A stretch of 63,399 bases of DNA, filler included, from Dimorphilus gyrociliatus (Eukaryota; Animalia; Annelida), in NCBI GenBank assembly GCA_904063045.1. It is 4 parts of 4 records of this genome, joined end to end, with 100 filler letters (N's around TTAATTAATTAA, not from the genome) between each part and the next. Parts side by side here need not be neighbours in the genome. Positions count along the whole stretch, not along the records: positions 28,720 to 47,294 come from CAJFCJ010000195.1; 3 more parts are not named here. One strand, given 5' to 3'. Position numbers and translations under genes: made by a program. Shown here one piece after another: positions 28,720-47,294 of the stretch; position 1 is the stretch's first letter, and each line of letters starts with the position of its first letter. The notes under the pieces were generated by a model. That model did not search any database. It was given only the letters and a program-made list of their open reading frames with translations, and had not been told where the DNA came from.

Positions 28720-29935
28720 GAAAGATGATGAGTTTATTGCAGAAAAGAGAGACTCTGTTAGTATAACCAATGAAGAAAACAATCAACAAACCAAATCAAC
28801 TAATCTAGTATAGAAAGAAATAATGAACAAATAGTAAATACAGCTGAGGAAACCAAGAATAAAACAGCAACTGAAGAAAAGGATAAAAATGAGGAAGAAA
28901 GGTTTACAGATCAAATCAGTGTTGAAAATGATCTTACTGAAATGATGGAAACAGCTACAAATGAAAATGATAACAAATTTTGTTCAAGAGACATTTCAAA
29001 TGAGACAATCATGGTGCTTGTGATAAAGAATCTGTTGTTACAAAATTACATTTGTCAAAAAATTTGAATTAGGATCACCATTAAAAACATCTTCACCAAT
29101 AGAAACTACTAACAATATCTCCATTGATTCTAGTGAACTGGATTTGTTTGATGAAAAAGCCTGGTTGGCATTGGAAGAGATGAGGTCTCAAGATCACTGC
29201 AAAGAAGCAAAAAAAATGGGTATAGATGGAGCCAATGCACTTGTTTTGAGTATGACAGATTGCATCAAAAAATATAAGGGATGGAAAATGATATTGAGGA
29301 ACAATTATAGAAAAGATAAAAAGCTGATTGATATTTATAGAGAATGGGGAAAGATTTCTTGTCAGACAAGGAGGCAAAAAACTTTTCAAAGTTATTGCCA
29401 CAAATATACAAATGAAAACAGAATTTTTTATGATATCTGACAGTTCATTTAGAGATATTCAAGTCAAAACTATCTCAATATAGCCTCCAAATATAAAATT
29501 GCTAAAAATGGAATATTAATCAACATTAGCCAATTAAACTATGAAGATATTTTACCCATTTTAAATAAACTGGAATATTCAATGTCAATATATATTCATA
29601 CATACAAATTTAAATTCTCCTAAAAAACATATGGATTAGCAAAATTTCTAAAGAACAAGTATGGAACTTGCAAGAATGTGATCATAGCCATTCCATTTGG
29701 CACAAAACTATTTTCTGCATACAAAGATATTCAAATGGCAACTAAGAAACAAGCCACTGTTCTTGATATGACTGATATGAGAAAATTGGGATTTACAGAT
29801 AATCCAACTGGAAATTCGAAATGTAAACACCTGACAAAGAAGGCACAAGAATTTTCAATTGATTTAGTAATGAAAACTTTGCAGAATTATCAAAGATCAG
29901 AAAGAGGAAACAATGGACATAGATACATCAACTAA
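28720..29935 (+). CDS. ORF1 of element A: acidic N-part plus putative SGNH/GDSL esterase domain, frameshifted
   Basis: Joining frames gives RIFMISDSSFRDI (block I), ILINISQLNYED (II), YIFIHTNLN (III), KHLTKKAQ (V). Confidence 0.5.
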
Positions 29936-29946
29936 CAAGTATATTA

Positions 29947-32623
29947 ATGTCTGGATTTAATTTCTATAAACAATTAAATACTCAATATGTTGTTAATTTG
30001 AGCAAATATCAGATTCCAAATGATGTCAATAGTTTTTTTAATCTTGGTTTAAAGTTTGTACATGAAAGTATAAAACCAGACAAATGGAAGCAATACACAT
30101 TGTTCAATTTAGAGAGATTCTTTAAAAAAGTATCAATCATTAAAAAACAAAATAAATCAACAAATCTGGAAAATCTTAGATGTATTAACTATCAATGGAT
30201 ACCAAAAGAAGGATTTGAAAGAAATATAACATCTGTTGAAGAACTAGATGATACTGATGATGATGATGGTGGTGATGGTGACAGTGATGAAATGTTACAA
30301 TTTTTCAAAGGATGCAGAAAGGCAATTCAAAGTAATATTTTTAAAGAGAATTCTAATCAAAACTTGGAAAATTTGACAAAGATTTCTTTAAATCTCTGAG
30401 AAAGTTTTTATCATTAGACATTGTGATTAAGCCAGCTGACAAGGATCTTGTGTTGTGATACAAAATACTGAAGATTATATCTACATGTGCAATCAATTAC
30501 TTTCTGATAATAAACAATATTGTAAACTATCAACAACTTCTAATATAAATATTTCTGGTAATAAATTTTTAGAAAAGTCAATTTTCTATTATAAAGACCT
30601 AATTAAAACATTTAAAGTTACCTTGGATGAAAAAGAATATAAACATTTGTTGGATTCTCTGTGTACAAAGAAGCATTCTTTTGAGAATAGAATATTTTAT
30701 GGCTTACCTAAAATACATAAGGAACCAGAACAATGGTTGGTTGATGGTAAAATTCCTAAAGGAAGGCCTGTTGTTAGCAATTTAAGGACAGAATCTTATG
30801 AAATATCAAGATATATCTCACATCACCTCAAACCAATTAGTATACTACATTCTTCATATATTGGTAATTCTAAACAACTGTTGGATGAACTTAATAGAAT
30901 AACAATTCCAGATGATGCTCTTTTGGTGACTCTGGACATAAAAAGTATGTATACAAACATTGATACTTACACTGGATTGAAAGCTGTAAAATATTTTTTT
31001 GAAAAGTATTCCTACAAGCACAGACCTGATGATTTTCTTATTCAACTTCTCAAATTCAACTTGCATAAGAATCATTTTAAATTTTTAGATACAATATACT
31101 TACAAAAGAGTGGTTGTGCTATGGGTCAAAGTTATGCTCCTGCTTATGCAAACTTATGGATGGCTTGGGTGGAAGAAGTGTACCTCTTCAACATTAGACC
31201 TAAACCTCTATTTTATAAAAGATATTTGGATGATATTTTCCTAATTTGGACAGGTAGCATTGATACATTTCATAGCTATCTTCAAAAAGTCAATAATATA
31301 TTAAAAAATTTAAAGTTTGAGGGAACAACTAGTTTTCAATCAATCAACTTTTTAGATTTAATTCTATTTAAAGGAACAAGATTTCTCTCAACAAATCAAT
31401 TGGATCATCTAACTTTCTTCAAAAATTGTGAAACATTTCATCAACTTCATAGAACTTCTTTTCATCCTAAACATATCTTTAAAGGACTTTTAAAATCTCA
31501 ATTCAAAAGATTTCTTAATAACAGCTCCTCTCCATTTCTATTCTTTCAAACTTGTCAAACTGTGATGAAACCACTTTCCAGTCAAGGCTACAGTGCTAAA
31601 GAAATAAGAAAAGCAATACAGTCTGCAATTAAAGACCAAATGAAGAAAGAAAACTATGAAAGAGTGTTGGAAGAAAATAGAAAGACACAGTGGAATATTC
31701 CAAAGGAATTAAGAATATATTTTAACATAAGAAAAAAGATATTCTGCCCTCTAAACATGAATTTCATTTATAGGAAAAACTGTGTAGATTTAATTACAGA
31801 TAACTCAAAAGTATTTCTATTACAATGTAAAGAATGTGGACAAATGATGTACTTTTCTATACAACAACATAAAAAAATCAGCATCTTACAAACACTTAAA
31901 TACCTTCTATCAAGAAAATATTTGGAATTGAATAATATTGACCTAGTAGAAAACTATATCCAGCATCAACATTTTGCAGAAAATCAATTTAATATAACAA
32001 TATTTCCTTATGAACAATTGCAAAGAGATAAATCAACAATTGAAATGAACAGATATATTTATCACTTGAATATGAAAAATGTCATGTATTATCCCTTTGG
32101 CTTAGCCAGATATACCAGTTGTCCAGTATATTCAAAGCTACCATTAATTATGCCTTATAGAAATGATCATGGACCAGTGTTAAAAAAATTAACAAAAACC
32201 TATAAATTATTAAGTGATAAGAATTCCATATTTAAAAACATTCCTCTGATATTTGCTTTTACAAACAACATAAATAGTTATTTTCAATTAATTCATAAAA
32301 ACATTTATTTTAAACAGGAACAAAATATGTCTACTTCCTTATTTCATAAAAGAAATACAACTAGTACAGATTCATCAGAAAAATGTCATTTTTCACTAAA
32401 TAAAACAGGAACATCAACAATTAAACATTTTTATAAAAAGAAGAATGCAGAAGAAACATCTTCACTTAGTGCACCACCTCAACCAGGAAAAAAACCAAAG
32501 TTTGATACAATTACAAGAAAATTCACTATGAAGAGGAAGATGGAGAAGGAAACAGACGAACATAAACCAGTAGTTGCAGAGAAGATGGTTAGAACTGGAA
32601 GAAGAATTAAGAAGAAACTTTAA
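29947..32623 (+). CDS. Penelope-like reverse transcriptase with C-terminal degenerate GIY-YIG domain (element A)
   Basis: VVNLSKY..LGLKF, IKPADK, FYGLPKIHK..GRPVVS, LDIKSMYTNI, GCAMGQSYAPAYANLWM, RYLDDIF, INFLDL, HPKH..KSQ. Two 1-nt homopolymer deletions near 30373 and 30442 split it. Confidence 0.93.
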
Positions 32624-32713
32624 ACTTTCAATATTTTTTAATTAGTTGTTTTCCTTTGAATATTTGTTTTGTTTGCTTCATAATAATTTGCTTTTCACTG
32701 CATATATCTGTAC

Positions 32714-32758
<45 letters not shown>

Positions 32759-32863
32759 TATTCTATGTATTCTTAGATTTGTTCAGTTCATATCTATAAT
32801 ATTCTTTTTGTGTAGAATATACTAAATTTTACTAAATTATTTTGTTTTTATAGATTTTCTATA

Positions 32864-33927
32864 ATGGCAAATAATACTCCACAAAATCAAATTGAAAGAA
32901 TAGAAAATGATGCAATTCTTATCAATCAAATAATTGATATTGAACATTTTTTACCACCATCTTTTCAACAATTTTTTAACTTTGGAACATTTTATAATCA
33001 TCTTCAAAGATTTAGAAGAGATGACAGAAATCATCCTCCAATTTTTGATGCAAGTAAATTTGAAAAAGATACTGTAGACAAACTGATGAAATTTAAACAA
33101 TTTTGTGATGAAAAAATGTGGCTTGTTGAACAACACCAAGTAAATAATATAAATAAACAACAACTTGGAGAAGTGATATTAAGATATTTGAATGGTACTG
33201 ACCAGCTTGTAAGATTTAATAATACAATCAAAGTTAATAGAAGAAAACATTTCAATGTTGGTGAACTACTAGCATCTTTTGCAGATATTGGAGTGAATTT
33301 AACAGAAGGGGAAATGGAAAATCTTATGAAAATTCAACAACCAGCAGTGAAATTTACTACCAACTGTAATTTGCTTCTCTTAACAGATGCTAGTTTGAGT
33401 GATTTGGATTTGTTTCAAATAGAAGATGTTAAGAGGAATATCAATTTTCATGGAAATATTTTGATTGTAAATATTTGTGGATTAACATTTGAAAATTGCA
33501 AAGAAATTTATCAAAATGGAAGATAAAAACTAACATTGTAGCTCTACATATTCCTTTTGACACCATTAATGATATTGATGATAATTTTCCAGCTATTTAT
33601 CAAAGTAATGGAAATATTAAGGAATGTATGCTGTTTATATCATACAAAGTTCAGGATAATTTTAATAATCAACAATTTCTACCAGAAAGGTTAAAAAAAA
33701 TGTTTACAAATATTGTTTATATCAATGGCATTATAAGAGGAGATCCTTTTCATAGAAGACTCCAACAGGACAAGATATCTCCTTTAAGAAATATTGTTCA
33801 ACATTTAATTTTTAATGAGATATTAGTAAACACTAAAGATGTGATAGAACAACAACAAAGAAGAACTGGAAGAAGAAGATTAAACAGACAAGATATTCAG
33901 GCTATAGAGGAACAACACAATGAGTGA
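32864..33927 (+). CDS. ORF3 of element A (~350 aa after one frameshift), SGNH-like without the catalytic Ser
   Basis: Overlapping ORFs 32864-33526 and 33496-33927; homologous along its length to 42790-43860; LLTDASLSDL, ILIVNICGLTFEN, GDPFH motifs. Confidence 0.7.
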
Positions 33928-34961
33928 AATTAACAGACCTATCAAAACTAAATTTCAATCTCTGTATATTTTATATAAACACTTTGATATTTCTCTAGTT
34001 TAAAATAGTAATATTAGCATAATATAACTATGTATTTATATCAATGCAAAATTGATTAGGTGTGTGACACACTGGAATGCCAGAGGCTGACATATCACTT
34101 CTTATATAATACCAAATGTGTCTAGGCTTGGGATACTAAAACTTTTATGTAATACCAGATACTTGTCAAGATAAACTGACATATCTTAGGATATGTCAAT
34201 TACATAACACTCCTCTATATAAGCTACAAGGTCTATCAAACATCATCACTTCAAGAAAATTCTCAGAACAAGAAGGACTGCTCTCTACAAAAACTCTGTT
34301 TAGTGATTCAACATCTACATACTACAAAAGATCATTTTTCTACATCAAACAACTCTGAAAGAAAAAACAAAGTAAGCTATATGTTTGTTTGTTCATTTGA
34401 GAAATTAAAGATACTATAATGTTTTACATTTATGTATCTATTTGTTTATATATGTTCAGGTGACTTTAAGATGTTATAGTTGATTTTCATCAATTTCATT
34501 TCTTTCATTAACACTATAAGACCTGTCAGACAACTTGGATTATATATCTTGCTGTTTAACAGTTCAAAAATTGTTCAATGAGGAACAGGAACAAATGAAA
34601 ATTATAAACTCTGGCATCTTTTGTAAACATTATATACACATTGTACCTACATTATATCTAAACATACCAATAGGACAACAAAAAAAACCATTAGGCAAAT
34701 AACTATATATCAGACCAAAGAAAATTTCAATAACTGAAAAGTAAGCAACTAGATATTACAAAACAAAAGTCATCTTATTGACAAGTATTACAAAGAATCA
34801 ACTTCTATGGTTGATATTCATCCATACATATATAAACCTACAAATACACATACAATTTCAACATCCATACAACAAGAACATTCTTGCAAGGAAGGATTCA
34901 ATTATAAAATTGGTCCTCTCCTCCCCTTCAAGATAGTTCTTAGGTTATACTATCCTCTGAA

Positions 34962-35016
34962 TTGACCCTGATGAGTCTTTGCATTAAAAGGGGAAGACGA
35001 AACCATGGTAGGTCAA
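34962..35016 (+). ncRNA. Minimal type I hammerhead ribozyme 1
   Basis: TTGACC-CTGATGA-GTCTT..AAGAC-GAAA-CCATGG-TA-GGTCAA; predicted cleavage after GUA (35010). Confidence 0.93.
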
Positions 35017-35800
35017 CCATACTTGGCAACCATCTAGATTAATATATCCTAGGTTAAACATACTATTGCAATTTAAAACCAAATCAAAAACAAACAAACA
35101 GACATAAATTGATTAGTGATGGGAAGAGTACTTGTTTTAAAATGTACAATAAGTTCTTACTCTTGCATTCCATTTCATTATGGGATCTTCTGAAAGTTTG
35201 GTGGAAGTTATTTGACTTTCATCAGAACTGAGACCTTAGTGTCTAGTTCAAACCTATATAAAACCTAATCACAAGTAAGAAGAGTCAAGGGGTTTTGAGG
35301 AACAGTACAAGTTGAACTTAACATCTGATCATCACAAATTCAATCAAAAATTAAAAAACATCAACTTTTATCCATTCAAAACAAATAAAAAACATATTTA
35401 CACACAAACATACACACATGCATTCATTGTTAAAAACAAAAGTTCTTATGAATACCATATATAACCTCACAAATTATATAAAAAATTAGGCATCAAAATA
35501 CAACTATCTATATGACCAAAATCATCTTCATAATCCTAATAGGAAACAAACTAAAAAAATTACAAAAAAATTACAAAAAACAAATCTCAACTTGTTGACA
35601 ACTATTACAAAAATCAACTTCAATGGTTGATATATACATTCACAATCACACATACACCTACACATAATGATACATATACATACATATAACAATTTATGAT
35701 TAGGCTTATAACCAAAAACTTACTGCAGGGAAGGATTCAATTGTAGAATTGATCCTCTCCTCCCCTTCAAGATAGTTCTTAGGTTATACTATCCTCTGAA

Positions 35801-35855
35801 TTGACCCTGATGAGTCTTTGCATTAAAAGGGGAAGACGAAACCATGGTAGGTCAA
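35801..35855 (+). ncRNA. Hammerhead ribozyme 2
   Basis: Same sequence as ribozyme 1. Confidence 0.93.
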
Positions 35856-36639
35856 CCATACTTGGCAACCATCTAGATTAATATATCCTAGGTTAAACAT
35901 ACTATTGCAATTTAAAACCAAATCAAAAACAAACAAACAGACATAAATTGATTAGTGATGGGAAGAGTACTTGTTTTAAAATGTACAATAAGTTCTTACT
36001 CTTGCATTCCATTTCATTATGGGATCTTCTGAAAGTTTGGTGGAAGTTATTTGACTTTCATCAGAACTGAGACCTTAGTGTCTAGTTCAAACCTATATAA
36101 AACCTAATCACAAGTAAGAAGAGTCAAGGGGTTTTGAGGAACAGTACAAGTTGAACTTAACATCTGATCATCACAAATTCAATCAAAAATTAAAAAACAT
36201 CAACTTTTATCCATTCAAAACAAATAAAAAACATATTTACACACAAACATACACACATGCATTCATTGTTAAAAACAAAAGTTCTTATGAATACCATATA
36301 TAACCTCACAAATTATATAAAAAATTAGGCATCAAAATACAACTATCTATATGACCAAAATCATCTTCATAATCCTAATAGGAAACAAACTAAAAAAATT
36401 ACAAAAAAATTACAAAAAACAAATCTCAACTTGTTGACAACTATTACAAAAATCAACTTCAATGGTTGATATATACATTCACAATCACACATACACCTAC
36501 ACATAATGATACATATACATACATATAACAATTTATGATTAGGCTTATAACCAAAAACTTACTGCAGGGAAGGATTCAATTGTAGAATTGATCCTCTCCT
36601 CCCCTTCAAGATAGTTCTTAGGTTATACTATCCTCTGAA

Positions 36640-36694
36640 TTGACCCTGATGAGTCTTTGCATTAAAAGGGGAAGACGAAACCATGGTAGGTCAA
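36640..36694 (+). ncRNA. Hammerhead ribozyme 3
   Basis: Same sequence as ribozyme 1. Confidence 0.93.
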
Positions 36695-37478
36695 CCATAC
36701 TTGGCAACCATCTAGATTAATATATCCTAGGTTAAACATACTATTGCAATTTAAAACCAAATCAAAAACAAACAAACAGACATAAATTGATTAGTGATGG
36801 GAAGAGTACTTGTTTTAAAATGTACAATAAGTTCTTACTCTTGCATTCCATTTCATTATGGGATCTTCTGAAAGTTTGGTGGAAGTTATTTGACTTTCAT
36901 CAGAACTGAGACCTTAGTGTCTAGTTCAAACCTATATAAAACCTAATCACAAGTAAGAAGAGTCAAGGGGTTTTGAGGAACAGTACAAGTTGAACTTAAC
37001 ATCTGATCATCACAAATTCAATCAAAAATTAAAAAACATCAACTTTTATCCATTCAAAACAAATAAAAAACATATTTACACACAAACATACACACATGCA
37101 TTCATTGTTAAAAACAAAAGTTCTTATGAATACCATATATAACCTCACAAATTATATAAAAAATTAGGCATCAAAATACAACTATCTATATGACCAAAAT
37201 CATCTTCATAATCCTAATAGGAAACAAACTAAAAAAATTACAAAAAAATTACAAAAAACAAATCTCAACTTGTTGACAACTATTACAAAAATCAACTTCA
37301 ATGGTTGATATATACATTCACAATCACACATACACCTACACATAATGATACATATACATACATATAACAATTTATGATTAGGCTTATAACCAAAAACTTA
37401 CTGCAGGGAAGGATTCAATTGTAGAATTGATCCTCTCCTCCCCTTCAAGATAGTTCTTAGGTTATACTATCCTCTGAA

Positions 37479-37533
37479 TTGACCCTGATGAGTCTTTGCA
37501 TTAAAAGGGGAAGACGAAACCATGGTAGGTCAA
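37479..37533 (+). ncRNA. Hammerhead ribozyme 4
   Basis: Same sequence as ribozyme 1. Confidence 0.93.
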
Positions 37534-38317
37534 CCATACTTGGCAACCATCTAGATTAATATATCCTAGGTTAAACATACTATTGCAATTTAAAACCAAA
37601 TCAAAAACAAACAAACAGACATAAATTGATTAGTGATGGGAAGAGTACTTGTTTTAAAATGTACAATAAGTTCTTACTCTTGCATTCCATTTCATTATGG
37701 GATCTTCTGAAAGTTTGGTGGAAGTTATTTGACTTTCATCAGAACTGAGACCTTAGTGTCTAGTTCAAACCTATATAAAACCTAATCACAAGTAAGAAGA
37801 GTCAAGGGGTTTTGAGGAACAGTACAAGTTGAACTTAACATCTGATCATCACAAATTCAATCAAAAATTAAAAAACATCAACTTTTATCCATTCAAAACA
37901 AATAAAAAACATATTTACACACAAACATACACACATGCATTCATTGTTAAAAACAAAAGTTCTTATGAATACCATATATAACCTCACAAATTATATAAAA
38001 AATTAGGCATCAAAATACAACTATCTATATGACCAAAATCATCTTCATAATCCTAATAGGAAACAAACTAAAAAAATTACAAAAAAATTACAAAAAACAA
38101 ATCTCAACTTGTTGACAACTATTACAAAAATCAACTTCAATGGTTGATATATACATTCACAATCACACATACACCTACACATAATGATACATATACATAC
38201 ATATAACAATTTATGATTAGGCTTATAACCAAAAACTTACTGCAGGGAAGGATTCAATTGTAGAATTGATCCTCTCCTCCCCTTCAAGATAGTTCTTAGG
38301 TTATACTATCCTCTGAA

Positions 38318-38372
38318 TTGACCCTGATGAGTCTTTGCATTAAAAGGGGAAGACGAAACCATGGTAGGTCAA
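38318..38372 (+). ncRNA. Hammerhead ribozyme 5
   Basis: Same sequence as ribozyme 1. Confidence 0.93.
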
Positions 38373-38619
38373 CCATACTTGGCAACCATCTAGATTAATA
38401 TATCCTAGGTTAAACATACTATTGCAATTTAAAACCAAATCAAAAACAAACAAACAGACATAAATTGATTAGTGATGGGAAGAGTACTTGTTTTAAAATG
38501 TACAATAAGTTCTTACTCTTGCATTCCATTTCATTATGGGATCTTCTGAAAGTTTGGTGGAAGTTATTTGACTTTCATCAGAACTGAGACCTTAGTGTCT
38601 AGTTCAAACCTATATAAAA

Positions 38620-38669
38620 CCCTAACCTAACCCTAACCTAACCCTAACCTAACCCTAACCTAACCCTAA
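38620..38669 (+). repeat. Telomeric tract (CCCTAACCTAA)4CCCTAA
   Basis: Strict alternation of hexamer and pentamer, read directly. Confidence 0.9.
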
Positions 38670-38993
38670 GAACAGTACAAGTTGGATTCTATGTCTGATC
38701 ATCCAGCTTACAAAAAAATTAAAACAAAAATTATTACAAAACACAAAAATACTCATATGTTCATTCATGCAAACAAACATACATTGATTACAAAATTCAA
38801 CTTCCACAAGTTGATATTACAAAAAACACACACAAACATCATTAGACATACAGTTACAAAACATTCCCTCTTCCATTCAATATATACACATTCATCAATC
38901 TTATGACAAAAATGGAATGCAAGGCAGGATACAATTGCAGAATTGGTCCTGACCTCCCCTTCAAGGTAGTGTAAGTGAAGCTATCTTCTGAAA

Positions 38994-39043
38994 TGACCCT
39001 GATGAGTCTTTGCAAAAGGGGAAGACGAAACCATGGTAGGTCA
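38994..39043 (+). ncRNA. Hammerhead ribozyme 6
   Basis: TGACC-CTGATGA-GTCTT-TGCAAAAGGGG-AAGAC-GAAA-CCATGG-TA-GGTCA. Confidence 0.93.
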
Positions 39044-39599
39044 ACTATTCTTAGTAACCATCAAAAAATTAGAACAAAAACTGAACATTTTTTCATCAAT
39101 CAGTTGTAGATAGTCTTACTTGTACAGAGTGTTCTTACTCTTGCATTCCATACCATTGTGGAATCTCTTGAAACTTTGGTGGAAGTTATTCAACTTTCAT
39201 CAGAACTTAGATCTTAGTATCTAGTTCAACATTACAAAAACCTAATCAGAAGTAAGGAGAGTCAAGGGGTTTGAAGAACAGTACAAGTTGGATTCTATGT
39301 CTGATCATCCAGCTTACAAAAAAATTAAAACAAAAATTATTACAAAACACAAAAATACTCATATGTTCATTCATGCAAACAAACATACATTGATTACAAA
39401 ATTCAACTTCCACAAGTTGATATTACAAAAAACACACACAAACATCATTAGACATACAGTTACAAAACATTCCCTCTTCCATTCAATATATACACATTCA
39501 TCAATCTTATGACAAAAATGGAATGCAAGGCAGGATACAATTGCAGAATTGGTCCTGACCTCCCCTTCAAGGTAGTGTAAGTGAAGCTATCTTCTGAAA

Positions 39600-39649
39600 T
39601 GACCCTGATGAGTCTTTGCAAAAGGGGAAGACGAAACCATGGTAGGTCA
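39600..39649 (+). ncRNA. Hammerhead ribozyme 7
   Basis: Same sequence as ribozyme 6. Confidence 0.93.
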
Positions 39650-39946
39650 ACTATTCTTAGTAACCATCAAAAAATTAGAACAAAAACTGAACATTTTTTC
39701 ATCAATCAGTTGTAGATAGTCTTACTTGTACAGAGTGTTCTTACTCTTGCATTCCATACCATTGTGGAATCTCTTGAAACTTTGGTGGAAGTTATTCAAC
39801 TTTCATCAGAACTTAGATCTTAGTATCTAGTTCAACATTACAAAAACCCTAACCCTAGTTAGGTATTACACTGGAACACTAGCTAACCAGTTCCCAAAAA
39901 CATTACCAGAGTTGTGTGAGTGGCCTAACCCATAACCCTTACCAAA

Positions 39947-39987
39947 CCCTAACCCTAACCTAACCCTAACCTAACCCTAACCCCTAA
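39947..39987 (+). repeat. Telomeric tract capping the 5'-truncated element B
   Basis: CCCTAA CCCTAA CCTAA CCCTAA CCTAA CCCTAA CCCCTAA joined to RT coding sequence. Confidence 0.88.
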
Positions 39988-42574
39988 ATATCAAATACCC
40001 CATGATGTTAATAATTTCTTAAATCTTGGCTTAAAATTTGTTTATCAACTCATCAAAGAAAAGCAATGGAGAGAACAAGCTTTATTGAATTTAGAAAAAT
40101 TTTACAAAAAAATATCATTTTTGAAAAAGCAAAGTGTTAATTCAAATTCATCAAGTCTCAGATTCATCAATCACAAATGGAAACCCATACACCCTAAAGA
40201 GTATTGTAATCCAGTTATTGTTGAAAATGATGATGATGACAATGATACATTAATGAAACTTTTTAAAGAATGTAAATCTGCTATAAAGAAACATATTTTC
40301 AAAGAAAATAATGGTAAACTGCAAATGTTTGATAAGACATTTTTCTCTTCTCTTTCAAAATTTCTCTCACTAGATATTGTTATTAAGCCAGCTGATAAAG
40401 GATCTTGCATTGTTATACAAAACACTGATGATTATGTCACTATGTGTGAACAGCTTCTTTCAGACTCAAAACAGTATTCTGTCCTATCAACAATATCATG
40501 TAACCAAACAACAGAAAATGATAGCTTTTTAAAACAGTCTATTACTTATTATAAAAACTTGATAAAAAGATTCAAAGTTATGCTTAATGATGATGAATAT
40601 CAAGAACTGTTAGACTCTGTTTGTATGAAACAAAATTTAATCAAGCATAGGATATTTTATGGATTGCCAAAGATTCACAAAGAAAGAGATGAATGGCTTA
40701 TAAATGGAAAAATACCTAAAGGTAGACCTGTTGTAAGCAACTTGAGAACTGAATCCTATGAAATATCAAGATTTCTATCACACTACTTGAAACCAATTAG
40801 TACATTACATGCTTCCTATATTGACAACTCTCAAAATTTTTTAAATCAACTAAGTAGAATTAACATTCCCTCTGATGCTCTTCTTATAACACTTGATGTT
40901 AAAAATATGTACACAAATATTGATACATATACTGGTCTGAAAGCTGTCAAATACTTTTTTCAAAAGTACCCTTCAAACAATAGACCTGATGACTTTCTAA
41001 TAGAACTTCTCCAGTATAATTTGCACAAGAATCATTTTAAATTTTTAAACAAAATATTTCTTCAAAAATTTGGATGTGCTATGGTCAGAGTTATGCTCCA
41101 GCATATGCTAATTTATGGATGGCTTGGATTGAAGAAGTTTTTCTTTTTAATATAAAACCAAAGCCATTTTTCTATAAAAGATATTTAGATGATATCTTTC
41201 TGATTTGGACTGAAGGAGTTGAAAAATTTGTTAATTATCTTAGAAAAGCCAACAGTATTTTAAAGAATCTGAAATTCAAGGAAAAAATTAGCTCAACTTC
41301 AATCAACTTTCTTGATTTGGTTCTCTTTAAAGGAACAAGATTTCTGTCTTCCAATCATTTGGATCATATAACATACTTCAAAAAATGTGAAACATTTCAC
41401 CAGTTACATCGAAATTCTCTTCATCCAAAGCACACTTTTAAAGGATTGTTGAAAGCTCAATTTCAAAGACTTTTTAAAAATAGTTCCTCCAATGTTATTT
41501 TTTATCTAACCTGTCAAACTGTTATCCATCCACTCTTACAGCAAGGCTATCACCTAAAAGAAATAAGAAAAGCAATAAAATCTGTACTGAAAGATGATTT
41601 GTATAGAGAACACTGCCAGAGAGAATTAAAAGAAATATGTGAAAAAAACAATGACATACCTGTGAAGATGAAAATCTTTTTCAACATCTCAAGCAAAATA
41701 TATCATCCTCTTAAATTACAATTCCTTTATAGAAATGGTTATATTAATTTTTTGGCTGAAAAACCCCAGATTTACCTCCTTCAATGTAAAGAGTGTGGAC
41801 AGTTAATGTTTTTTTCCATTTTCCAAAAGTACACAGATGTGAATATTTTTGAAACACTTGATTATTTACTGTCAAGACAGTACTTGAAAATTAAAAATGA
41901 TGAACTAGTGGAGAATTTTATTGAACATGGTCATTTTAATGAAAATCAACAAAATATTACAATATTTCCATATGAACAAATACAAAAAGAAATGTCTCCA
42001 ATTGAAGTCTGTAAACATGTTTATATATTAAATACAAAATATATCATGTTTCATCCTTTTGGTTTGGCAAAATTCACTTCTTGCCAAAATTCAACAAAAT
42101 TACCATTCATTATACCTTTTGGAAACCAACTACAGCCATTGATTAAAAAAATTCATAAATGTTATTGTAAATTTAGAATAGAAAATCCCACTTTGAAAAA
42201 CCTTCATTTGATATTTGCTTATACCAACAACACAAATATATATGTAAAACTAATAAATACTAATACAAGCTATCAACAGCAACAAATTGAATCCACTTCT
42301 TTCGCTTGCTCCAAGAACAATAGCTCACATGATACAAGTACTGAAACATCTTTATTAGAAAAAGCCAAATTGCCAACAATCAAGAACTTCTACAAGAGGA
42401 CAACTTGTCAAAAAGAACCTTCTTACATTCCAGATAAGAAGCCAAAATTGGATGAAACAATCACCAGAAAGTTTAAATCCAATGAGCACAATGAAGGGAG
42501 TTGTGGAAAAAACAAGTGATCCACCTGTAATTAAAAGAACTGGAAGAAGAATTAAGAAGATAGCAAAAAATTAA
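39986..42574 (+). CDS. Penelope-like RT with degenerate GIY-YIG (element B), N-terminally truncated and frameshifted
   Basis: IKPADKG, FYGLPKIHK, LDVKNMYTNI, RYLDDIF, IYLLQCKECG. Missing G at ATGG(G)TCAG (~41083); a further shift near 42480 extends the tail to RTGRRIKKIAKN*. Confidence 0.92.
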
Positions 42575-42789
42575 ACAAAAACTTAATATTAGTTTCTTGT
42601 AGAACATAGAATTTGTTAAAGTTACCTTATGGTAAATTGTAGAAATAGTTAAAACATTTGTAAAAGTTGTAGGCAGTATGTGTAGAACTTCCACAAAGTA
42701 TACATTTATCCCAATATATATATAGAACACATTTTTGAAAAAATACATTTCATTAACCAGTTTGCTTCATTTAAAATAGGTTTATACCA

Positions 42790-43860
42790 ATGGCTTCAAG
42801 TAATCCAATTAATACAAATACTAAAGTGATCATTGAAAACTCAAAAAATGTGATTGCAAATAACATCAATGTTGACCATTTTCTTCCTTCTTCATTTCAA
42901 GACTTTTTCAACTTTCAATTGTATTACAATTGCATAAAAAAGTATATGAGAAATAAAGCCATCCAACCTCCACTATACAATGAGAAGGAACATGAAAAAG
43001 CTCTTCTTACCAAAATGTCACAATTCAAAGAATTTTGTAACAAGGAATTATGGCTAGTTGAACATAATGAACAGAAAAGATTTATTAACACAGAACATCT
43101 TGTTAACTTAATCTATGAGCATCTGAACAAAACAGACAACACTGTCAAACTTGAAAATTCTTTCAAATTAAACAGAAAAACAATTGACATCAGAGAAAAT
43201 ATTATACAGCAACTCCACAGAATTGGAATAAATTTGAGTGAAGATGAAGCTATAAATTCTTTTAAAATACAACAACCAGCAATCAACTTTCCAGATGTCT
43301 TGGATTTGCTAATCTTAAGTGATCATAGTTTGGAGATGTTGATTTGAATAATGTTAGACTTGTTCAGAACAACATCAGATTTCAAGGAAATATAATCATT
43401 TTGAATATTAAAGAATTGTCATTTGCCAACTGTAAAGAAATACTTTTAAACTGGAAGTTAAAAGCAAAGGTAGTTGTTTAAATGTTCCATTTCAAGAAGA
43501 ACATGACACTGATAAACACTTCTACCTGATATCAGAAAATAACTCAATAACAAACATATCATGTTGGTTCAAAAATATCAGCTTCAGAAATCTCCAATCA
43601 ACAACACATTCCAACATATCCTTCAGAAAATGTTTACAAATATTATCAATGTTAACCAAATGATAAAAGGAGACCCATTCCATGCAAGAATACCTCCAAC
43701 TAAATTATCACCTTTAAGGAATGCTGTTCAACAACTAATTATGAATGAAATTATCGTACAGCTCAAACCATTCTCAACCAACAAAACATCCAAAGAACTG
43801 GAAGGAAAAGAAAAAGATACAAGCCAATCAAAACAACAATCTTCAATCATAGGACTCTAA
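42790..43860 (+). CDS. ORF3 of element B, homologue of 32864-33927, frameshifted
   Basis: HFLPSSFQDFFNF, KEFCNKELWLVE, IQQPA, LILSDHSL, KMFTNI..GDPFH..SPLRN shared with A. Confidence 0.7.
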
Positions 43861-44074
43861 TAATTTAAAAATCACAGAACAATCAAAGTAAGTAAAAACT
43901 CTCATAGTCTAACAATGCTAACAATACCAATACTCAGTTACCACTTAGAATTAAATAAAAATAATATTGAGCAAAACTGTAAAGTAAAAGTAAATACAAA
44001 AAAAAATTGCTGGGAGTTGATACAATTCTAGAATTGATCTCTCCTCCCCTTGATTAGTATTCAAAACAATCGAA

Positions 44075-44123
44075 TGACCCTGATGAGTCTTTGCTAAAGG
44101 GAAGATGAAACCATGGTAGGTCA
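44075..44123 (+). ncRNA. Hammerhead ribozyme 8
   Basis: TGACC-CTGATGA-GTCTT..AAGAT (G-U closing pair)-GAAA-CCATGG-TA-GGTCA. Confidence 0.88.
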
Positions 44124-44665
44124 GTTACTCAAAAATATTTTCAAAAATTTTTTACATCATGAACCAGGATATTGTTTTCTCTGTCAAACCTGTGCAGGAG
44201 GTCCACACTCTTGCATTCCATTTGGAACTCCTGAAAATTGGTGGAAGCTACCAACTTTTACCAGGACTTAGATCATAGTGTCAAGTTCAACTTTTATTAA
44301 AACCTTACACAGAAGTATGGAGAGCCAAGGGGTTTTAAAGGACAGCACTAGTCTGATGGGCAAATCATACTCTGGTTCAAAAAAATTTTTTTCATTCAAA
44401 ACAAAAAAGCAATAAAAATATACAACAAAGCAAACTCAATCAAACCCATACACACTTATGCATACACTTATCACAAAAATCAACTTCAATAGTTGATATT
44501 GCACCCACACATACACATGCAACATTAGAGATACACTTAAAAAATTCCATCTAAATACATGCACCCAATCCTATAGCAAAAAATTAAATGCAAGGTGGGA
44601 TCCAGTTAAAGAATTGATCCTAGCCTCCCCTTCCAGATAGCAGTAAGAGAAGCTATACTCAGAAA

Positions 44666-44715
44666 TGACCCTGATGAGTCTTTGCTAAAGGGGAAGACGA
44701 AACCATGGTAGGTCA
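44666..44715 (+). ncRNA. Hammerhead ribozyme 9
   Basis: TGACC-CTGATGA-GTCTT..AAGAC-GAAA-CCATGG-TA-GGTCA. Confidence 0.93.
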
Positions 44716-44897
44716 GTTACTCAAAAAATATTTTTCAAAAAATTTTTTACATCATGAACCAGGATATTGTTTTCTCTGTCAAACCTGTGCAGGAGGTCCA
44801 CACTCTTGCATTCCATTTGGAACTCCTGAAAATTGGTGGAAGCTACCAACTTTTACCAGGACTTAGATCATAGTGTCAAGTTCAACTTTTATTAAAA

Positions 44898-45004
44898 CCC
44901 TAACCTAACCTAACCCTAACCTAACCCTAACCCTAACCTAACCCTAACCTAACCCTAACCTAACCCTAACCCCTAACCCTAACCTAACCTAACCCTAACC
45001 CTAA
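44898..45004 (+). repeat. Telomeric tract of 19 units (10 CCCTAA, 8 CCTAA, 1 CCCCTAA)
   Basis: Read directly; marks the boundary between the retroelement chain and AT-rich flank. Confidence 0.92.
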
Positions 45005-45869
45005 AATTTTTCATTATAGAGCTGTAAAGTTTTTTTTACATTAAACAAAAGTTAGCTAATACAATATTAATGTATTGAATAGGTTTTATATGTTACTTTC
45101 CTCTTTCTCAAATATATATATATATAATTGATTTCATTAAACATTGGAGAGATATATAAAGAATACTTTTATCAATTTAACCACAGCAAACCAAATGCTA
45201 CAATTCAAGATTCCTTTTAAAAGTATATAAAAATATTCAAAGGAATGATTTCCATCAGAACCAATAGAAAAAGTTTTGGGAAGAAGAGGTCTATAAGAAA
45301 AGGATTAAGACAATAAGAAAAATAAACATGGTAAATAAGAAAACAAGAAAAAGGAACAGGAGAAACAGAAGGAAAACAAGAAGAGAAACAAACTCACCAA
45401 AAGGATGAGCAAGCAGAAGAGGCAGAGATGAAGAAAGTGTTATTTATTTTGAAGAAATAGATATTAAAAAAAATGATAAAAATATATATTAACCAAGAAA
45501 TTTGATTCAAACATTTGATAAAAAATTGTTAAACTGAGAAGAATTGATCACTCTTACAAATAACTTTTGTTTTTAGCTAAAATTCATAAAAAAATATTAA
45601 TTATAGTAAAGAATGAAAAGTAATTATTATAAATTTAATACCAACAGCAAGACAGAATTGTAAAGTTATATTATATTATATATTTACTTTAAATTTCAAT
45701 TTTGCCTTAAACTTTAATATATTTTCTTTATACAATTCATCACATTTCTATTAATATTTTTGGAATAAGAAATATTTATGTATTATGCAGAACATCCCTC
45801 TAATTGTTATTATTTTTTCCTGACAATAATTTTGGTTCAAATTTGATCAAAATCGGCCCAGTAGTTGCT

Positions 45870-47130
45870 GAGATATGGATTATAAGAAACATTATATATC
45901 AACTCTATTAAAAGCTTATATAAACAAAAATATTCGATGTTCAAAAAAACTAAATTTGTTAATATAAAAGTCAGAGCTCTGAAATTTTGTACATATACTA
46001 ATATTGATATACCGATTATAAATCTTTTTACAGAATTCAATTATCTTTTATAGTTTGGGAGCTACGTTACGTTAAAGTTTGTATTAGAAGACTTTTTTTT
46101 TAAAAAAAAAGAAAAAAAAATTTTTCATCTTGAGTGATGTCTTAAAAAAAAAAGAACGGCGGTGGTGTCTGTTAATTAGTTTCAATATTACGAACTCAAT
46201 ATTATTTGGTCAGTCTGCCTACACCCCTACACATCAAAATGTAAGTAAAATTGTTAAATTACCCTGATTAATATCTGTTTTTGTAATTAATTTTTGTTGT
46301 ATTTTATCTATTAAAATATGTAGAATGTTATCTGTTGCTTTTTAATTATTTTATTCAATTACTTTACTTTAAATCCCATTAATTTCTGCCAAAAGACATA
46401 AGTTACTTTTGAACACTACATTAAATGTAAGCCTATAATCATATTTTCGTCACAAAATTTTAACTCTGTTATGAATTAAGTTAGAGCTTTGAAATTTGGT
46501 ACATAGATTGTTATTATTACGCCGATATTAAATCTTTTTACAGAACTCAATTATCTTTTACGGTTCAAAAGATATGGCGCCGTCAAGTTTTATTCATTAT
46601 TCTTTATTTGTGAGCCTATATGAAATATTCGATAGGGCTAATCTAACTCTGTTATTAATAATCATAAAGCTTTCAAAGTTGGAACATAGATTAATATTAG
46701 TGGGCCGATTAAAAATCCTTTTACAGAATTCAATTATCTTGTATGGTTCAAAAGTTATGGCGCCGTTAAATTCTGTTGCTATTTCTTCTCCATAGGTCTA
46801 TATAAAATATTCGTTAGGGTCGATAAAAGTTAGTTAATATGTACAATAGAGCTTTGAAATTCAGTTCATATAGTAATATTGGTAGGCCGATTTCAAATCC
46901 GTTTACAGAATTCAATTATCTCTTTTGGTTCAAAAGTTATGGCAACTTTATTTTTTCGTCAATACTTTGTATTTAGGCCTTAAAAAATATTTGTCATCTG
47001 AAAACTAACTTTCTTATTAGTTAGCTTAGAGCTTTGAAACTTGGTATATAGACTAATTTTGGTATGCCGATCTCAAATCTGCTTACAGAATCCAAATATC
47101 AGTTACCGTTTTTGAGCTATTTACAATTAA
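45870..47130 (+). repeat. Diverged ~180-bp tandem repeats (subtelomeric satellite or non-autonomous element)
   Basis: AGAGCTTTGAAATT..GCCGAT..TTACAGAATTCAATTATC recurs at 46031, 46541, 46724, 46906, 47086. Confidence 0.75.
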
Positions 47131-47294
47131 AGTGTTTTACAGTTTGCTGTTATAAATATTTTTATTGTTATGATATTGTTGTGTTCAAAAGTTAATTGTT
47201 ATGAATGTAAGAGTGTTTGAATTGTATATTGGAGTTTTAGTGTGCTTTTTAATAATTTGATTGTAATTATCTGTTTTTAATTAAGATAAAGCTT

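What the first reader, a model, noticed from the sequence alone, without database searches (positions are those of the whole stretch)
28720..45004. Terminon-like chain of telomere-attached Penelope-like retroelements, apparently outside bdelloid rotifers
Seen: a co-oriented chain reading element A - telomeric tract - 606-bp ribozyme dimer - telomeric tract - 5'-truncated element B - 107-bp telomeric tract - AT-rich flank. C-rich repeats are always on the sense strand, so a chromosome end would lie to the left and elements were added right to left. Known: endonuclease-deficient Athena PLEs and multi-ORF Terminons of bdelloid rotifers show this polarity, hammerheads at 3' ends, telomere-capped 5' truncations and GDSL esterase cargo. 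Inferred: this is an analogous telomere-extending retroelement system in another invertebrate, built from an RT lineage that still carries a GIY-YIG remnant, so possibly an independent origin.
Basis: partly seen in the sequence, partly recalled or inferred. Interest (0 to 1): 0.92.

Follow-up and report, generated by a model that had tools for sequence, protein, structure and literature searches.

The report
Telomere-attached Penelope-like retroelement chain
A head-to-tail chain of reverse-transcriptase elements and ribozyme-bearing repeats, each joined to telomere repeats, lies at what looks like a chromosome end of a non-rotifer invertebrate (probably the small annelid Dimorphilus); the arrangement is known from rotifer Athena/Terminon elements, but this lineage still carries a dead endonuclease domain.

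Summary
All telomeric tracts are C-strand on +. All nine hammerhead cores are on +. All three element 3' ends join the repeats at the same homologous site (...AAAACC|CTAACC).

The RT is a Penelope-like RT. Its only close relatives are in Dimorphilus gyrociliatus (46% identity). Next come endonuclease-bearing PLEs. The GIY-YIG remnant is real: the CC/HF motifs are kept, the invariant Glu, Asn and YIG Gly are replaced, and it is under purifying selection (dN/dS about 0.12).

These are not bdelloid Terminons. The telomere repeat differs, a relic EN is present, there are only two ORFs, and GDSL cargo is unconfirmed. Independent origin from an EN+ ancestor is plausible but not shown by phylogeny; a shrimp precedent (MjPLE01) exists. 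Terminal chromosomal location is unproven.

Short-read contigs place 1-nt insertions at the ORF breaks of B, so those frameshifts are probably assembly errors. I rate this a new variant of a known kind.

The parts
28720..38617 (+). Element A: a near full-length PLE, cut by the piece's left edge. It contains an N-terminal extension, the RT ORF, ORF2, a 3' UTR and a hammerhead unit array.
   Evidence: tblastn of the Dimorphilus protein P0001: residues 259-471 match 29243-29875, 482-549 match 29947-30150, and 634-1209 match 30431-32182. ORFs are listed.
29947..32623 (+). RT ORF of A in two pieces (29947-30399 and 30455-32623, with an apparent 1-nt frameshift near 30440). The RT motifs are intact, including YLDD.
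   Evidence: translation; best hit is the D. gyrociliatus protein DgyrCDS14925 (E 8.8e-146, 46% identity), followed by EN+ PLEs at E about 1e-80.
31811..32116 (+). Relic GIY-YIG domain (residues 453-554 of the 722-aa piece), followed by a C-terminal extension at 32117-32305 that is shared with linker-type EN+ PLEs.
   Evidence: Alignments: C36, C39 and H84-F85 are kept; the invariant Glu is M/V/I, Asn is A/A/A, the YIG Gly is lost and the linker Cys is lost. HMM E about 0.01. The model's best PDB matches are GIY-YIG nucleases, Z 6.4-4. dN/dS 0.12.
32864..33927 (+). ORF2 of A in two pieces (32864-33526 and 33496-33927). It is an orphan protein. Its C-terminal half has by-eye SGNH-like motifs (DAS, HGN, IND, DPFH) that remain unverified.
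   Evidence: No Pfam, Atlas or homologue hit. Exhaustive profile search: only a D. gyrociliatus fragment. dN/dS A vs B is 0.44.
34755..38617 (+). Array of 839-bp hammerhead units, 4.6 copies. The first partial unit is 84-96% identical to the rest, and the other four are identical to each other. HHR cores lie at 34968-35003, 35807-35842, 36646-36681, 37485-37520 and 38324-38359.
   Evidence: (families D1, D7-D9).
38618..38669 (+). Telomeric tract 1, C-strand, with units alternating 6/5 nt (CCCTAA/CCTAA). It separates A's 3' end from the dimer's 5' end.
38670..39849 (+). Dimer of a 606-bp hammerhead unit (retrozyme-like or solo pseudo-LTR). It consists of body, 33-nt tail and body. HHR cores lie at 38999-39031 and 39605-39637.
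   Evidence: (D10, 100% identity).
39850..39923 (+). Short telomeric cap (CCTAACCCTAG...) followed by the 3'-terminal 53 nt (39871-39923) of another repeated element, which ends ...GTGTGAGTGG.
   Evidence: in all four runs the sequence upstream of 39871 differs at other loci (loose end ACTCCTACCTATTGG...). A related 3' end (...CTGCAAGTGG) is seen after telomeric repeats.
39924..39983 (+). Telomeric tract 2, degenerate at its left side. It caps the 5' truncation of B.
39984..44897 (+). Element B: a different family (about 73-76% nt and 65% aa identity to A), 5'-truncated. RT pieces are 40085-41155 and 41074-42519. ORF2 pieces are 42790-43347 and 43561-43860. About 1.5 units of 595 bp carry HHR cores at 44080-44111 (U variant) and 44671-44703.
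   Evidence: (D11-D19). Short-read contigs tile 39988-44639 at 99% or more.
44898..45004 (+). Telomeric tract 3 (19 units of 5-7 nt), lying between B's 3' end and the non-telomeric flank.
45005..47294 (.). AT-rich flank without ORFs. It holds about 5 diverged copies of a ~182-bp repeat (45923-47130) and is presumed to be subtelomeric.
   Evidence: D6. A contig covers 45011-45700 at 98.5% identity.
41554..41659 (-). 106-nt segment skipped in contigs of runs X2 and X3. It has canonical minus-strand splice sites (CAG|GTATGT...TTTTAG|G).
42540..42625 (-). 86-nt segment skipped in X3 and X4. X2 uses an alternative acceptor at about 42525. Minus-strand sites are AAG|GTAAC...TTCCAG|T or TTACAG|G.

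Best explanation
This is a subtelomeric or telomeric stack of Penelope-like retroelements, built by successive additions to a chromosome end that lay to the left.

Proposed cycle:
1. The G-rich telomeric 3' overhang anneals to a short element-encoded AACC(UAA) site. That site lies about 190-250 nt downstream of the hammerhead, inside the 3' module of the element RNA.
2. The element's RT extends the overhang. The endonuclease-like domain is catalytically dead, so no nick is needed.
3. cDNA synthesis stops at the RNA 5' end or earlier, which gives 5' truncation.
4. Telomerase re-caps the new end with TTAGGG/TTAGG repeats.
5. The cycle repeats.

Hammerhead-bearing non-coding units (839, 606 and 595 bp) share the 3' module. 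They are carried along as multimers, or mobilised in trans like retrozymes.

Shown: the anatomy, the orientation, the identical 3' junction site, the dead but constrained GIY-YIG relic, the PLE affinity, and relatives in Dimorphilus.
Inferred: overhang priming, telomerase healing, the terminal position, the host identity, and independence from Athena.
For: - Chain and orientation. C-strand tracts occur only on +, and the innermost tract abuts non-telomeric flank in the orientation expected for a left chromosome end.
- Three independent 3' junctions from three diverged families fall at the same homologous position (...AAAACC|CTAACC). Internal unit-to-unit junctions carry an extra 33-34 nt 'tail'. 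This matches the PLE signature of RT initiation internal to the RNA (PMC11167929).
- The 5' ends differ (the unit boundary at 38670; inside the ORF at 39984) and both are capped by telomeric repeats.
- Reads show further junctions of the same kind at other loci: a unit 3' end, then CTGTGTAACCCTAACCTAG, then a truncated unit; and a 3' end followed by ACCCTAACCCC....
- The EN relic lacks the invariant Glu, Asn and YIG Gly in A, B and the Dimorphilus protein. It evolves under dN/dS 0.12, like the RT at 0.09-0.14.
- The RT motifs are intact.
- Short-read contigs place 1-nt insertions at B's ORF breaks, so the copies are probably intact and young.
- The same architecture is documented for Athena/Terminons (PMC6431247, PMC8557442).
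Against: - No contig bridges a telomeric tract, so the junction order is not independently verified.
- The piece ends inside element A, so a terminal position is not shown.
- Junction phase is constant at the 3' (3 of 3) and 5' (2 of 2) sides. A site-specific nick would also give this.
- A related ORF2 fragment in Dimorphilus (L002) and the P0001 copy (L001) have no telomeric repeats within 10 kb. L001's 3' end is hidden in an assembly gap.
- The element-encoded complementarity to the overhang is only 5-7 nt.
- The hammerhead is not adjacent to the 3' end as it is in Athena.
Confidence: 0.65

Rival explanations
1. The elements insert site-specifically into pre-existing telomeric-repeat arrays, terminal or interstitial. 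An endonuclease acting in cis or in trans (ORF2, or an EN+ PLE elsewhere in the genome) would make the nick, as TRAS/SART do in Bombyx. This replaces attachment to free ends.
For: Junction phase is constant at both sides of the insertions. ORF2 has no assigned function. EN+ PLEs are known to prefer microsatellite targets (PMC8557442).
Against: The element's own EN relic lacks the invariant Glu, Asn and YIG Gly. Some caps are only 12-19 nt long (39850-39861; read variant), which is a poor target for insertion but enough as a healed end. All members share one orientation, and it matches a left-end telomere. No target-site duplication can be discerned.
Confidence: 0.15
2. The chain did form at a chromosome end, but the locus is now internal: a fossil telomere or interstitial telomeric site left by fusion or rearrangement. 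Alternatively the family is mostly dispersed and this is an exceptional locus.
For: A terminal position is not shown. Related fragments lie in internal-looking Dimorphilus contigs without telomeric repeats. Tract 2 is degenerate.
Against: Units within the arrays are 100% identical, and B matches short-read contigs at 99% or more, with its ORF breaks attributable to assembly indels. The additions are therefore recent. Tracts 1 and 3 are nearly perfect.
Confidence: 0.1
3. The chain is an assembly chimera: a long-read contig that stitches together repeated telomere-associated pieces which are not contiguous in the genome.
For: The assembly carries many 1-nt indel errors. All short-read contigs break at the telomeric tracts. 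The hammerhead module has very high k-mer depth (5,900-64,000 against about 215-500 elsewhere), so it is highly repeated.
Against: Each junction has the same logic (defined 3' end, then repeats, then a truncated 5' end). Reads independently show other junctions of that kind. Long reads normally span 50-110-bp tracts.
Confidence: 0.05
4. This is an ordinary, already known Athena/Terminon of a bdelloid rotifer, either a contaminant or a mislabelled host.
For: The architecture is the same (PMC6431247). With GIY-YIG clusters excluded, the nearest ESM-Atlas clusters are mostly rotifer clusters.
Against: The telomeric repeat is CCCTAA/CCTAA, whereas bdelloid elements carry (ACACCC)n or (TCACCC)n (PMC6431247). 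The best and only close relatives of the RT, the N-terminal extension and ORF2 are D. gyrociliatus proteins. A relic EN is present, whereas Athena lacks EN entirely (PMC8557442). GC content of about 29% resembles the Dimorphilus contigs at 25-28%.
Confidence: 0.02

Closest known systems
Athena EN-deficient PLEs and Terminons of bdelloid rotifers (Gladyshev & Arkhipova 2007; Arkhipova et al. 2017; reviewed in PMC6431247)
   Same: Head-to-tail, co-oriented arrays. 3' ends are joined to C-strand telomeric repeats. 5' truncations are capped by short telomeric stretches. There is a hammerhead in the 3' module and no working endonuclease. Other sequences are captured between members.
   Different: The host is not a rotifer, and the repeat is TTAGGG/TTAGG rather than TGTGGG. 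A relic GIY-YIG domain is retained, whereas Athena has none. The hammerhead lies 187-251 nt upstream of the 3' end rather than immediately next to the repeats. The element encodes only about one telomeric unit (AACCUAA). There are two ORFs with the extra ORF downstream of the RT, and the body is not a giant multi-ORF one. GDSL, DEDDy and Rep cargo were not found. The position of the RT relative to Athena is untested.
MjPLE01, the Neptune-like EN- PLE of kuruma shrimp (Koyama et al. 2013, cited in PMC8557442)
   Same: An EN- family that arose within or next to the EN+ C-terminal-EN PLEs in a non-rotifer animal. PMC8557442 states that such families must secure 3'-OH ends by other means.
   Different: The phylum and the lineage differ. 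I could not read the primary paper; my recollection that MjPLE01 sits in TTAGG-type repeats at chromosome ends is from memory only.
Linker-type C-terminal EN+ PLEs (Neptune/Nematis-like; hits P0002-P0008 and others)
   Same: RT similarity at E about 1e-80 and 31-36% identity over about 85% of the query. Same domain order: RT, then GIY-YIG, then a C-terminal 'IPFV...NKNL' extension. [quoted passage not shown]
   Different: The CX2-5CxxC linker cysteines, the YIG Gly and the catalytic Glu and Asn are lost. There is a long orphan N-terminal extension and an extra ORF2. The junctions are telomeric rather than dispersed insertions. The branch is very long, about 3.3 substitutions per site.
Non-LTR retrozymes: tandem type I hammerhead repeats of animals (PMC7229834; bioRxiv 10.64898/2026.07.22.740005)
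   Same: The 839-bp x4.6 and 606-bp x2 arrays carry one type I hammerhead per unit, share their sequence with a PLE terminal module, and are non-coding.
   Different: Here the arrays are attached to telomeric repeats at a defined 3' site, and one array is contiguous with an autonomous element. circRNA formation was not tested.
TRAS/SART telomeric-repeat-specific non-LTR elements of Bombyx
   Same: Retroelements interspersed with TTAGG-type repeats in a fixed orientation and phase.
   Different: Those are LINE-like elements with an active AP endonuclease that nicks the repeats. Here the RT is PLE-type and the only nuclease-like domain lacks its catalytic residues.

Membership tests
Penelope-like elements (PLE) | RT homologous to PLE RTs | tested here: met
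   554 hits, of which 120 were listed. Apart from the Dimorphilus protein, the best hits are proteins carrying RVT_1, DUF8422, HTH_animal and mostly GIY-YIG, at E 1e-83 to 1e-72. YLDD and the other motifs are intact. Pfam itself misses the window protein.
Penelope-like elements (PLE) | Hammerhead ribozyme motif in the terminal repeat | tested here: met
   Nine cores on the + strand against 0.003 expected. Helix I has 5-6 of 6 bp, helix II is predicted, and the cleavage site is GUA. The core is invariant across three families that are about 73% identical elsewhere. Rfam is negative. Self-cleavage was not assayed.
Penelope-like elements (PLE) | Tandem or pseudo-LTR organisation with an optional 30-40 nt 'tail' (internal RT initiation) | tested here: met
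   Internal unit junctions carry 33-34 nt that are absent from all three terminal junctions. Compare PMC11167929.
EN+ PLEs (Neptune/Nematis/Penelope-Poseidon) | Catalytically competent C-terminal GIY-YIG endonuclease with the CCHH motif | tested here: not met
   The domain is present, but the invariant Glu is M/V/I, Asn is A/A/A, the YIG Gly is lost and the linker Cys is lost. The CxxC and HF motifs are kept.
Athena / Terminon | RT belongs to the Athena clade | not testable with these tools
   No Athena, Coprina or TERT sequence could be obtained. In the unrooted tree of 71 sequences, (A, B, Dimorphilus) sits on a long branch attached to the linker-type EN+ part.
Athena / Terminon | EN domain entirely absent from the RT ORF | tested here: not met
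   A relic GIY-YIG domain is retained and constrained.
Athena / Terminon | 3' end joined to reverse-complement telomeric repeats; 5' truncations capped by telomeric repeats; head-to-tail arrays | tested here: met
Athena / Terminon | Telomeric-repeat stretch immediately downstream of the hammerhead fold | tested here: not met
   The distance from the cleavage site to the 3' end is 251 nt (A), 205 nt (606 unit) and 187 nt (B).
Athena / Terminon | Giant multi-ORF body with accessory genes (GDSL esterase, DEDDy exonuclease, Rep, stand-alone EN) | tested here: not met
   Only the RT ORF and one further ORF are present. ORF2 has no detectable family. SGNH-like motifs were seen by eye only.
Athena / Terminon | Bdelloid rotifer host with (TGTGGG)n telomeres | tested here: not met
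   The repeats are CCCTAA/CCTAA. The closest relatives are in D. gyrociliatus.
Non-LTR retrozymes | Tandem repeats with a type I hammerhead in every unit | tested here: met
   839 bp x4.6 and 606 bp x2.
Non-LTR retrozymes | Self-cleaved, circularised RNA | not tested
   No RNA run of known type was available. Contigs cannot show RNA ends.

The most novel reading that the evidence does not exclude
A lineage of Penelope-like elements in a lophotrochozoan (Dimorphilus or a close dinophilid annelid) has become telomere-specialised independently of rotifer Athena. It killed but kept its GIY-YIG domain, perhaps as a DNA-end or repeat-binding module. It primes reverse transcription from the telomeric overhang at an internal AACCUAA site. 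It loads hammerhead 'retrozyme' multimers onto chromosome ends. The ends of this very compact genome would then be composite telomerase-plus-retroelement structures, transcribed towards the end and spliced on the antisense strand.
Probability: 0.4. Interest if true: 0.75.

Novelty: new variant of a known kind. Interest (0 to 1): 0.62.

Why it matters
PLE RTs are the sister group of telomerase RTs, and telomere-attached PLEs are the main argument for a link between the two.

In the papers I could read, telomere-attached animal PLEs are described for bdelloid rotifers. One EN- family, in a shrimp, is named as arising within an EN+ clade. A further case in an annelid, derived from an endonuclease-bearing ancestor with the dead domain still under selection, would have three consequences:
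- It would show that end-attachment evolves repeatedly.
- It would point to a non-catalytic role for the GIY-YIG fold.
- It would tie hammerhead tandem repeats (retrozymes) to PLE-driven addition at chromosome ends.

Dimorphilus gyrociliatus is culturable and has a 74-Mb genome, so the model is testable there.

On the practical side, small repeat-rich contigs of this assembly carry indel errors that mimic pseudogenisation.

Tried and rejected
- Rfam at E<=1 finds no hammerhead. The motif was established by pattern, alignment and folding instead.
- Pfam sees nothing in any window ORF.
- ORF2:
  - ESM Atlas gave no usable hit.
  - The word-based homologue search gave none.
  - The exhaustive profile search of 1.84 billion representatives gave one D. 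gyrociliatus fragment and one spurious repeat protein.
  - AlphaFold of the C-terminal piece failed at pLDDT 42.
  - The GDSL/SGNH reading therefore stays a by-eye lead.
- The N-terminal extension of the Dimorphilus protein has no homologue other than itself.
- The PDB sequence search of the RT ORF gave nothing meaningful.
- An HMM of the EN+ GIY-YIG domain scores the relic only marginally, at E about 0.01 for 3 targets.
- The RT tree could not be rooted and holds no Athena, Coprina or TERT sequence, so it neither supports nor rejects independent origin. It is also affected by a very long branch.
- A metagenome scan for the 19-nt hammerhead core returned only unrelated, mostly bacterial contigs.
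- The Terminon and Athena primary papers (PMC5850863, PMC1890498) and the MjPLE01 paper are not held. Their content is taken from PMC6431247 and PMC8557442.
- Read laying returned contigs only, so it gives no RNA ends, no strand information and no bridging of the telomeric tracts.
- The bdelloid Terminon reading was considered and rejected (see rival explanations).

Full report
ANATOMY

The piece 28720-47294 has about 29% G+C. On the + strand it reads as follows.

- Element A (28720-38617) is cut by the piece's left edge.
  - It has an N-terminal extension homologous to residues 259-471 of a Dimorphilus protein.
  - Its RT ORF is in two pieces (29947-30399 and 30455-32623).
  - A second ORF covers 32864-33927, also in two pieces, followed by a 3' UTR.
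  - From about 34755 there is a 4.6-unit array of 839-bp units. The last four units are identical; the first is 84-96% identical to them.
- Next comes a 52-bp telomeric tract (38618-38669).
- Then a dimer of a 606-bp unit (38670-39849; 100% identical copies).
- Then a 12-nt telomeric cap, and 53 nt (39871-39923) that read contigs show to be the 3' end of yet another repeated element.
- Then a degenerate telomeric tract (39924-39983).
- Element B follows (39984-44897). It is a different family: about 73-76% nt identity to A, and 65% aa identity in the tree alignment. It is 5'-truncated at the position of residue ~501 of the Dimorphilus protein.
- Then a 107-bp telomeric tract (44898-45004).
- Last is an ORF-free AT-rich flank with diverged ~182-bp repeats.

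Every telomeric tract is C-strand on +, and there is no G-strand tract on +. Shuffles give none. The tracts mix 6-nt and 5-nt units (CCCTAA/CCTAA), often in strict alternation.

HAMMERHEADS AND THE 3' MODULE

Nine matches to CUGAUGAG-N-[C/U]GAAAC occur, all on +, against 0.003 expected. Each has these features:
- a 5-6 bp helix I (UUGACC/GGUCAA);
- a 6-bp helix II;
- a 2-bp helix III closed by the palindromic loop CAUG;
- a GUA cleavage site.

This is the minimal type I form described for PLEs (PMC4209133). Rfam's models do not see it.

The core is invariant across the three unit families, which are otherwise about 73% identical.

All three element-to-telomere junctions fall at the same homologous position, ...AAAACC|CTAACC. 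Where one unit is followed by another unit, the sequence continues AAAACC-UAAUCA... for a further 33-34 nt before the next unit body starts (GAACAGUACAAG...).

The 606-bp dimer is exactly body-tail-body. Its telomere-capped 5' end sits exactly at the start of a unit body.

This is the PLE 'tail' signature. Frangieh et al. (PMC11167929) traced that signature to reverse transcription starting inside the RNA rather than at its 3' end. In families A and 606 the start site is AACCUAA, which is one telomeric unit. In B it is AACCUUA.

THE PROTEINS

The 722-aa RT piece finds one close relative, DgyrCDS14925 of Dimorphilus gyrociliatus (E 8.8e-146, 46% identity). After that come hundreds of PLE proteins, most of which carry GIY-YIG (PF01541), at E about 1e-80.

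In the Dimorphilus contig the homologous ORF is open for 1319 codons until an assembly gap.

Between the RT thumb and a C-terminal extension, A, B and the Dimorphilus protein carry a region with the GIY hairpin and its two cysteines (V[F/Y]L[L/I]xCKEC) and the HF motif. The C-terminal extension is shared with the linker-type (CX2-5CxxC) EN+ relatives. The residues that are invariant in 34 EN+ relatives are replaced in all three proteins:
- Glu becomes M/V/I;
- Asn becomes A/A/A;
- the YIG Gly is lost;
- the linker Cys is lost.

Evidence on the nature of this relic:
- An HMM of the EN+ domain recognises it only marginally (E about 0.01).
- An AlphaFold model (pLDDT 73) has GIY-YIG nucleases as its best PDB matches: 9u75 at Z 6.4, I-TevI at Z 6.0 and UvrC at Z about 4. 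Its alignment is dominated by EN+ relatives, so this is not independent evidence.
- Between A and B the relic evolves at dN/dS about 0.12, like the RT (0.09-0.14). dS is saturated, so the values are rough.

The domain is therefore dead as a nuclease but still under selection.

ORF2 is conserved between A and B (39-43% identity, dN/dS about 0.44). It has no family in Pfam, the Atlas or the 5.8-billion-protein set. An exhaustive profile search found only a fragment embedded in a chimeric D. gyrociliatus gene model. By eye, its C-terminal half carries SGNH-like blocks (DAS, HGN, IND, DPFH). I could not verify this, and the fold attempt failed.

HOST

The evidence is indirect:
- The only relatives of the RT, the N-terminal extension and ORF2 are in the D. 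gyrociliatus assembly GCA_904063045.1, at 67-70% nt identity.
- Those contigs have a similar G+C content (25-28%).
- The stretch is held at 99% or more by runs from a 2020 study and from a 2017 study filed under a different organism label. This would fit the renaming of Dinophilus to Dimorphilus gyrociliatus.
- The published assembly is PacBio-based (PMC7854359), which fits the indel errors described below.

I take the host to be D. gyrociliatus or a close dinophilid. It is not a bdelloid, whose elements carry (ACACCC)n or (TCACCC)n (PMC6431247).

WHAT THE READS ADD (contigs only)

- Short-read contigs tile element B and the flank but all break at the telomeric tracts. The junction order is therefore not independently confirmed.
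- The contigs carry 1-nt insertions at 41082, 43331, 43473, 43551 and 43760, among others. These are the places where B's ORFs change frame in the window.
- Downstream of 43760 the alternate frame reads QRTGRKRKRYK, matching RRTGRRRLNRQ at the end of A's ORF2. B's 'frameshifts' are therefore most likely long-read consensus errors, and B is probably intact from its truncation point. I did not build corrected sequences.
- k-mer depth of the hammerhead module is 10-100 times that of B's body or the flank, so the module is highly repeated.
- Other junctions of the same type exist in the reads: a unit 3' end, then a 19-nt telomere-like spacer, then a truncated unit; and a 3' end followed by telomeric repeats and then a different sequence.
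- Contigs of three runs skip 106 nt (41554-41659) and 86 nt (42540-42625, with an alternative acceptor at about 42525). Both segments are bounded by canonical GT...AG signals on the minus strand. If those runs are RNA, which their sizes suggest but the record does not state, the elements are crossed by spliced antisense transcripts running from the subtelomere towards the chromosome end.

MECHANISM

The simplest account is end-attachment. The G-overhang pairs with the AACC(UAA) site of the 3' module. The RT extends it without any nick. The cDNA ends at the RNA 5' end or earlier. Telomerase then re-caps the end. Each junction in the chain is a former chromosome end, with the oldest on the right.

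The identical units within the arrays suggest multimeric, or possibly circular, hammerhead-unit RNAs as templates. The lower identity of A's first unit suggests either a template switch in the conserved core or a master copy that already carried the array.

All of this is inference from anatomy, from the dead EN, and from what is established for Athena (PMC6431247, PMC8557442) and for PLE initiation (PMC11167929).

The main rival is site-specific insertion into telomeric arrays by some nuclease. It explains the constant junction phase equally well. It is disfavoured by the dead EN and by caps as short as 12-19 nt.

COMPARISON AND NOVELTY

The system works like Athena/Terminon, but it fails several membership tests for that family:
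- a relic EN is present;
- the hammerhead is not adjacent to the repeats;
- there is no giant multi-ORF body;
- the host and the telomeric repeat differ.

In an unrooted tree, (A, B, Dimorphilus) is a 100%-supported clade on a very long branch. It attaches to the linker-type EN+ part and lies outside the well-supported no-linker clade. Without Athena, Coprina or TERT the tree cannot test independence.

What is shown is that the lineage descends from an EN-bearing ancestor.

PMC8557442 already notes that EN- families arise within EN+ clades (Chlamys PLE-X; Neptune-like MjPLE01 of shrimp). The principle is therefore known.

No held paper mentions Dimorphilus together with Penelope. The D. gyrociliatus genome paper mentions neither telomeres nor Penelope. 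A 2023 survey lists only Athena among PLE-type telomeric elements (PMC10088271).

I rate this a new variant of a known kind, of solid specialist interest. It remains open on two points: terminal location and phylogenetic independence.

Noticed in passing
window 39701-45700 (41082, 42507, 42656, 43331, 43473, 43551, 43760, 44098-44142): Short-read contigs differ from the window by single-base insertions or deletions exactly where element B's ORFs change frame. The apparent pseudogenisation is probably long-read consensus error. Element A's breaks (~30440, ~33510) were not checked.
   Followed up: partly
window 41554-41659 and 42540-42625 (alternative site ~42525), minus strand: Contigs of runs X2-X4 lack these segments, which have canonical minus-strand GT...AG splice signals and an alternative acceptor. 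This suggests spliced antisense transcripts running from the subtelomere towards the chromosome end (TERRA-like direction). The run type is not on record.
   Followed up: partly
window 38618-38669, 39947-39980, 44898-45004: The telomeric tracts are mixtures of CCCTAA and CCTAA, often strictly alternating (11-nt period AACCCTAACCT). The same mix appears in short-read junction variants, so it is unlikely to be only homopolymer error. This is unusual for an annelid, where I would expect plain TTAGGG.
   Followed up: no
window 39871-39923: These 53 nt are the 3' end of a fourth, unidentified repeated element ending ...GTGTGAGTGG directly before telomeric repeats. Reads show a related end (...CTGCAAGTGG) at other loci. 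This may be another telomere-attaching family.
   Followed up: no
window 32585-32623, 33868-33900, 42535-42560, 43790-43825 (alternate frame): Both ORFs of both elements end in a basic RTGR[RK][RI] motif (VRTGRRIKKKL, RRTGRRRLNRQ, KRTGRRIKKI, QRTGRKRKRYK). It may be a shared localisation or nucleic-acid-binding tail.
   Followed up: no
window 32717-32761: A (TA)22 microsatellite lies between the RT ORF and ORF2 of element A and is absent from B. (TA)n is the preferred target of several EN+ PLE clades (PMC8557442).
   Followed up: no
window 45923-47130: About five diverged copies (62-76% identity) of a ~182-bp repeat lie in the flank, perhaps a subtelomeric satellite or a SINE/MITE-like family. 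The flank contig in the reads differs from the window by 1.5%.
   Followed up: no
L001 10001-13959 (D. gyrociliatus CAJFCJ010000101.1): The homologous PLE ORF is open for 1319 codons, then runs into a 3.2-kb N gap. The annotated gene model DgyrCDS14925 (1212 aa) is this retroelement ORF. No other called gene lies in 23.8 kb.
   Followed up: partly
L002 11472-11830 (D. gyrociliatus CAJFCJ010000043.1): Gene model DgyrCDS14481 is a chimera of an F5/8 type C (discoidin) domain protein and a 360-bp fragment of the element's ORF2. There are no telomeric repeats or hammerhead nearby.
   Followed up: partly
proteins P0002-P0008 versus P0009, P0035, P0045, P0052: Among EN+ PLE hits, the conserved 'LPxVxxYS...(A/G)[FY]xRNKNLxDxLV' module lies downstream of the GIY-YIG domain in linker-type proteins and upstream of it in no-linker (fish) proteins. 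This is a domain-order difference that separates the two groups.
   Followed up: no
L007 985-1040 (metagenome contig JADWZK010131562.1): This contig shares the 19-nt hammerhead core and has a downstream GAAAC, so it may be an unrelated hammerhead. The other eleven metagenome hits are one conserved bacterial locus.
   Followed up: no
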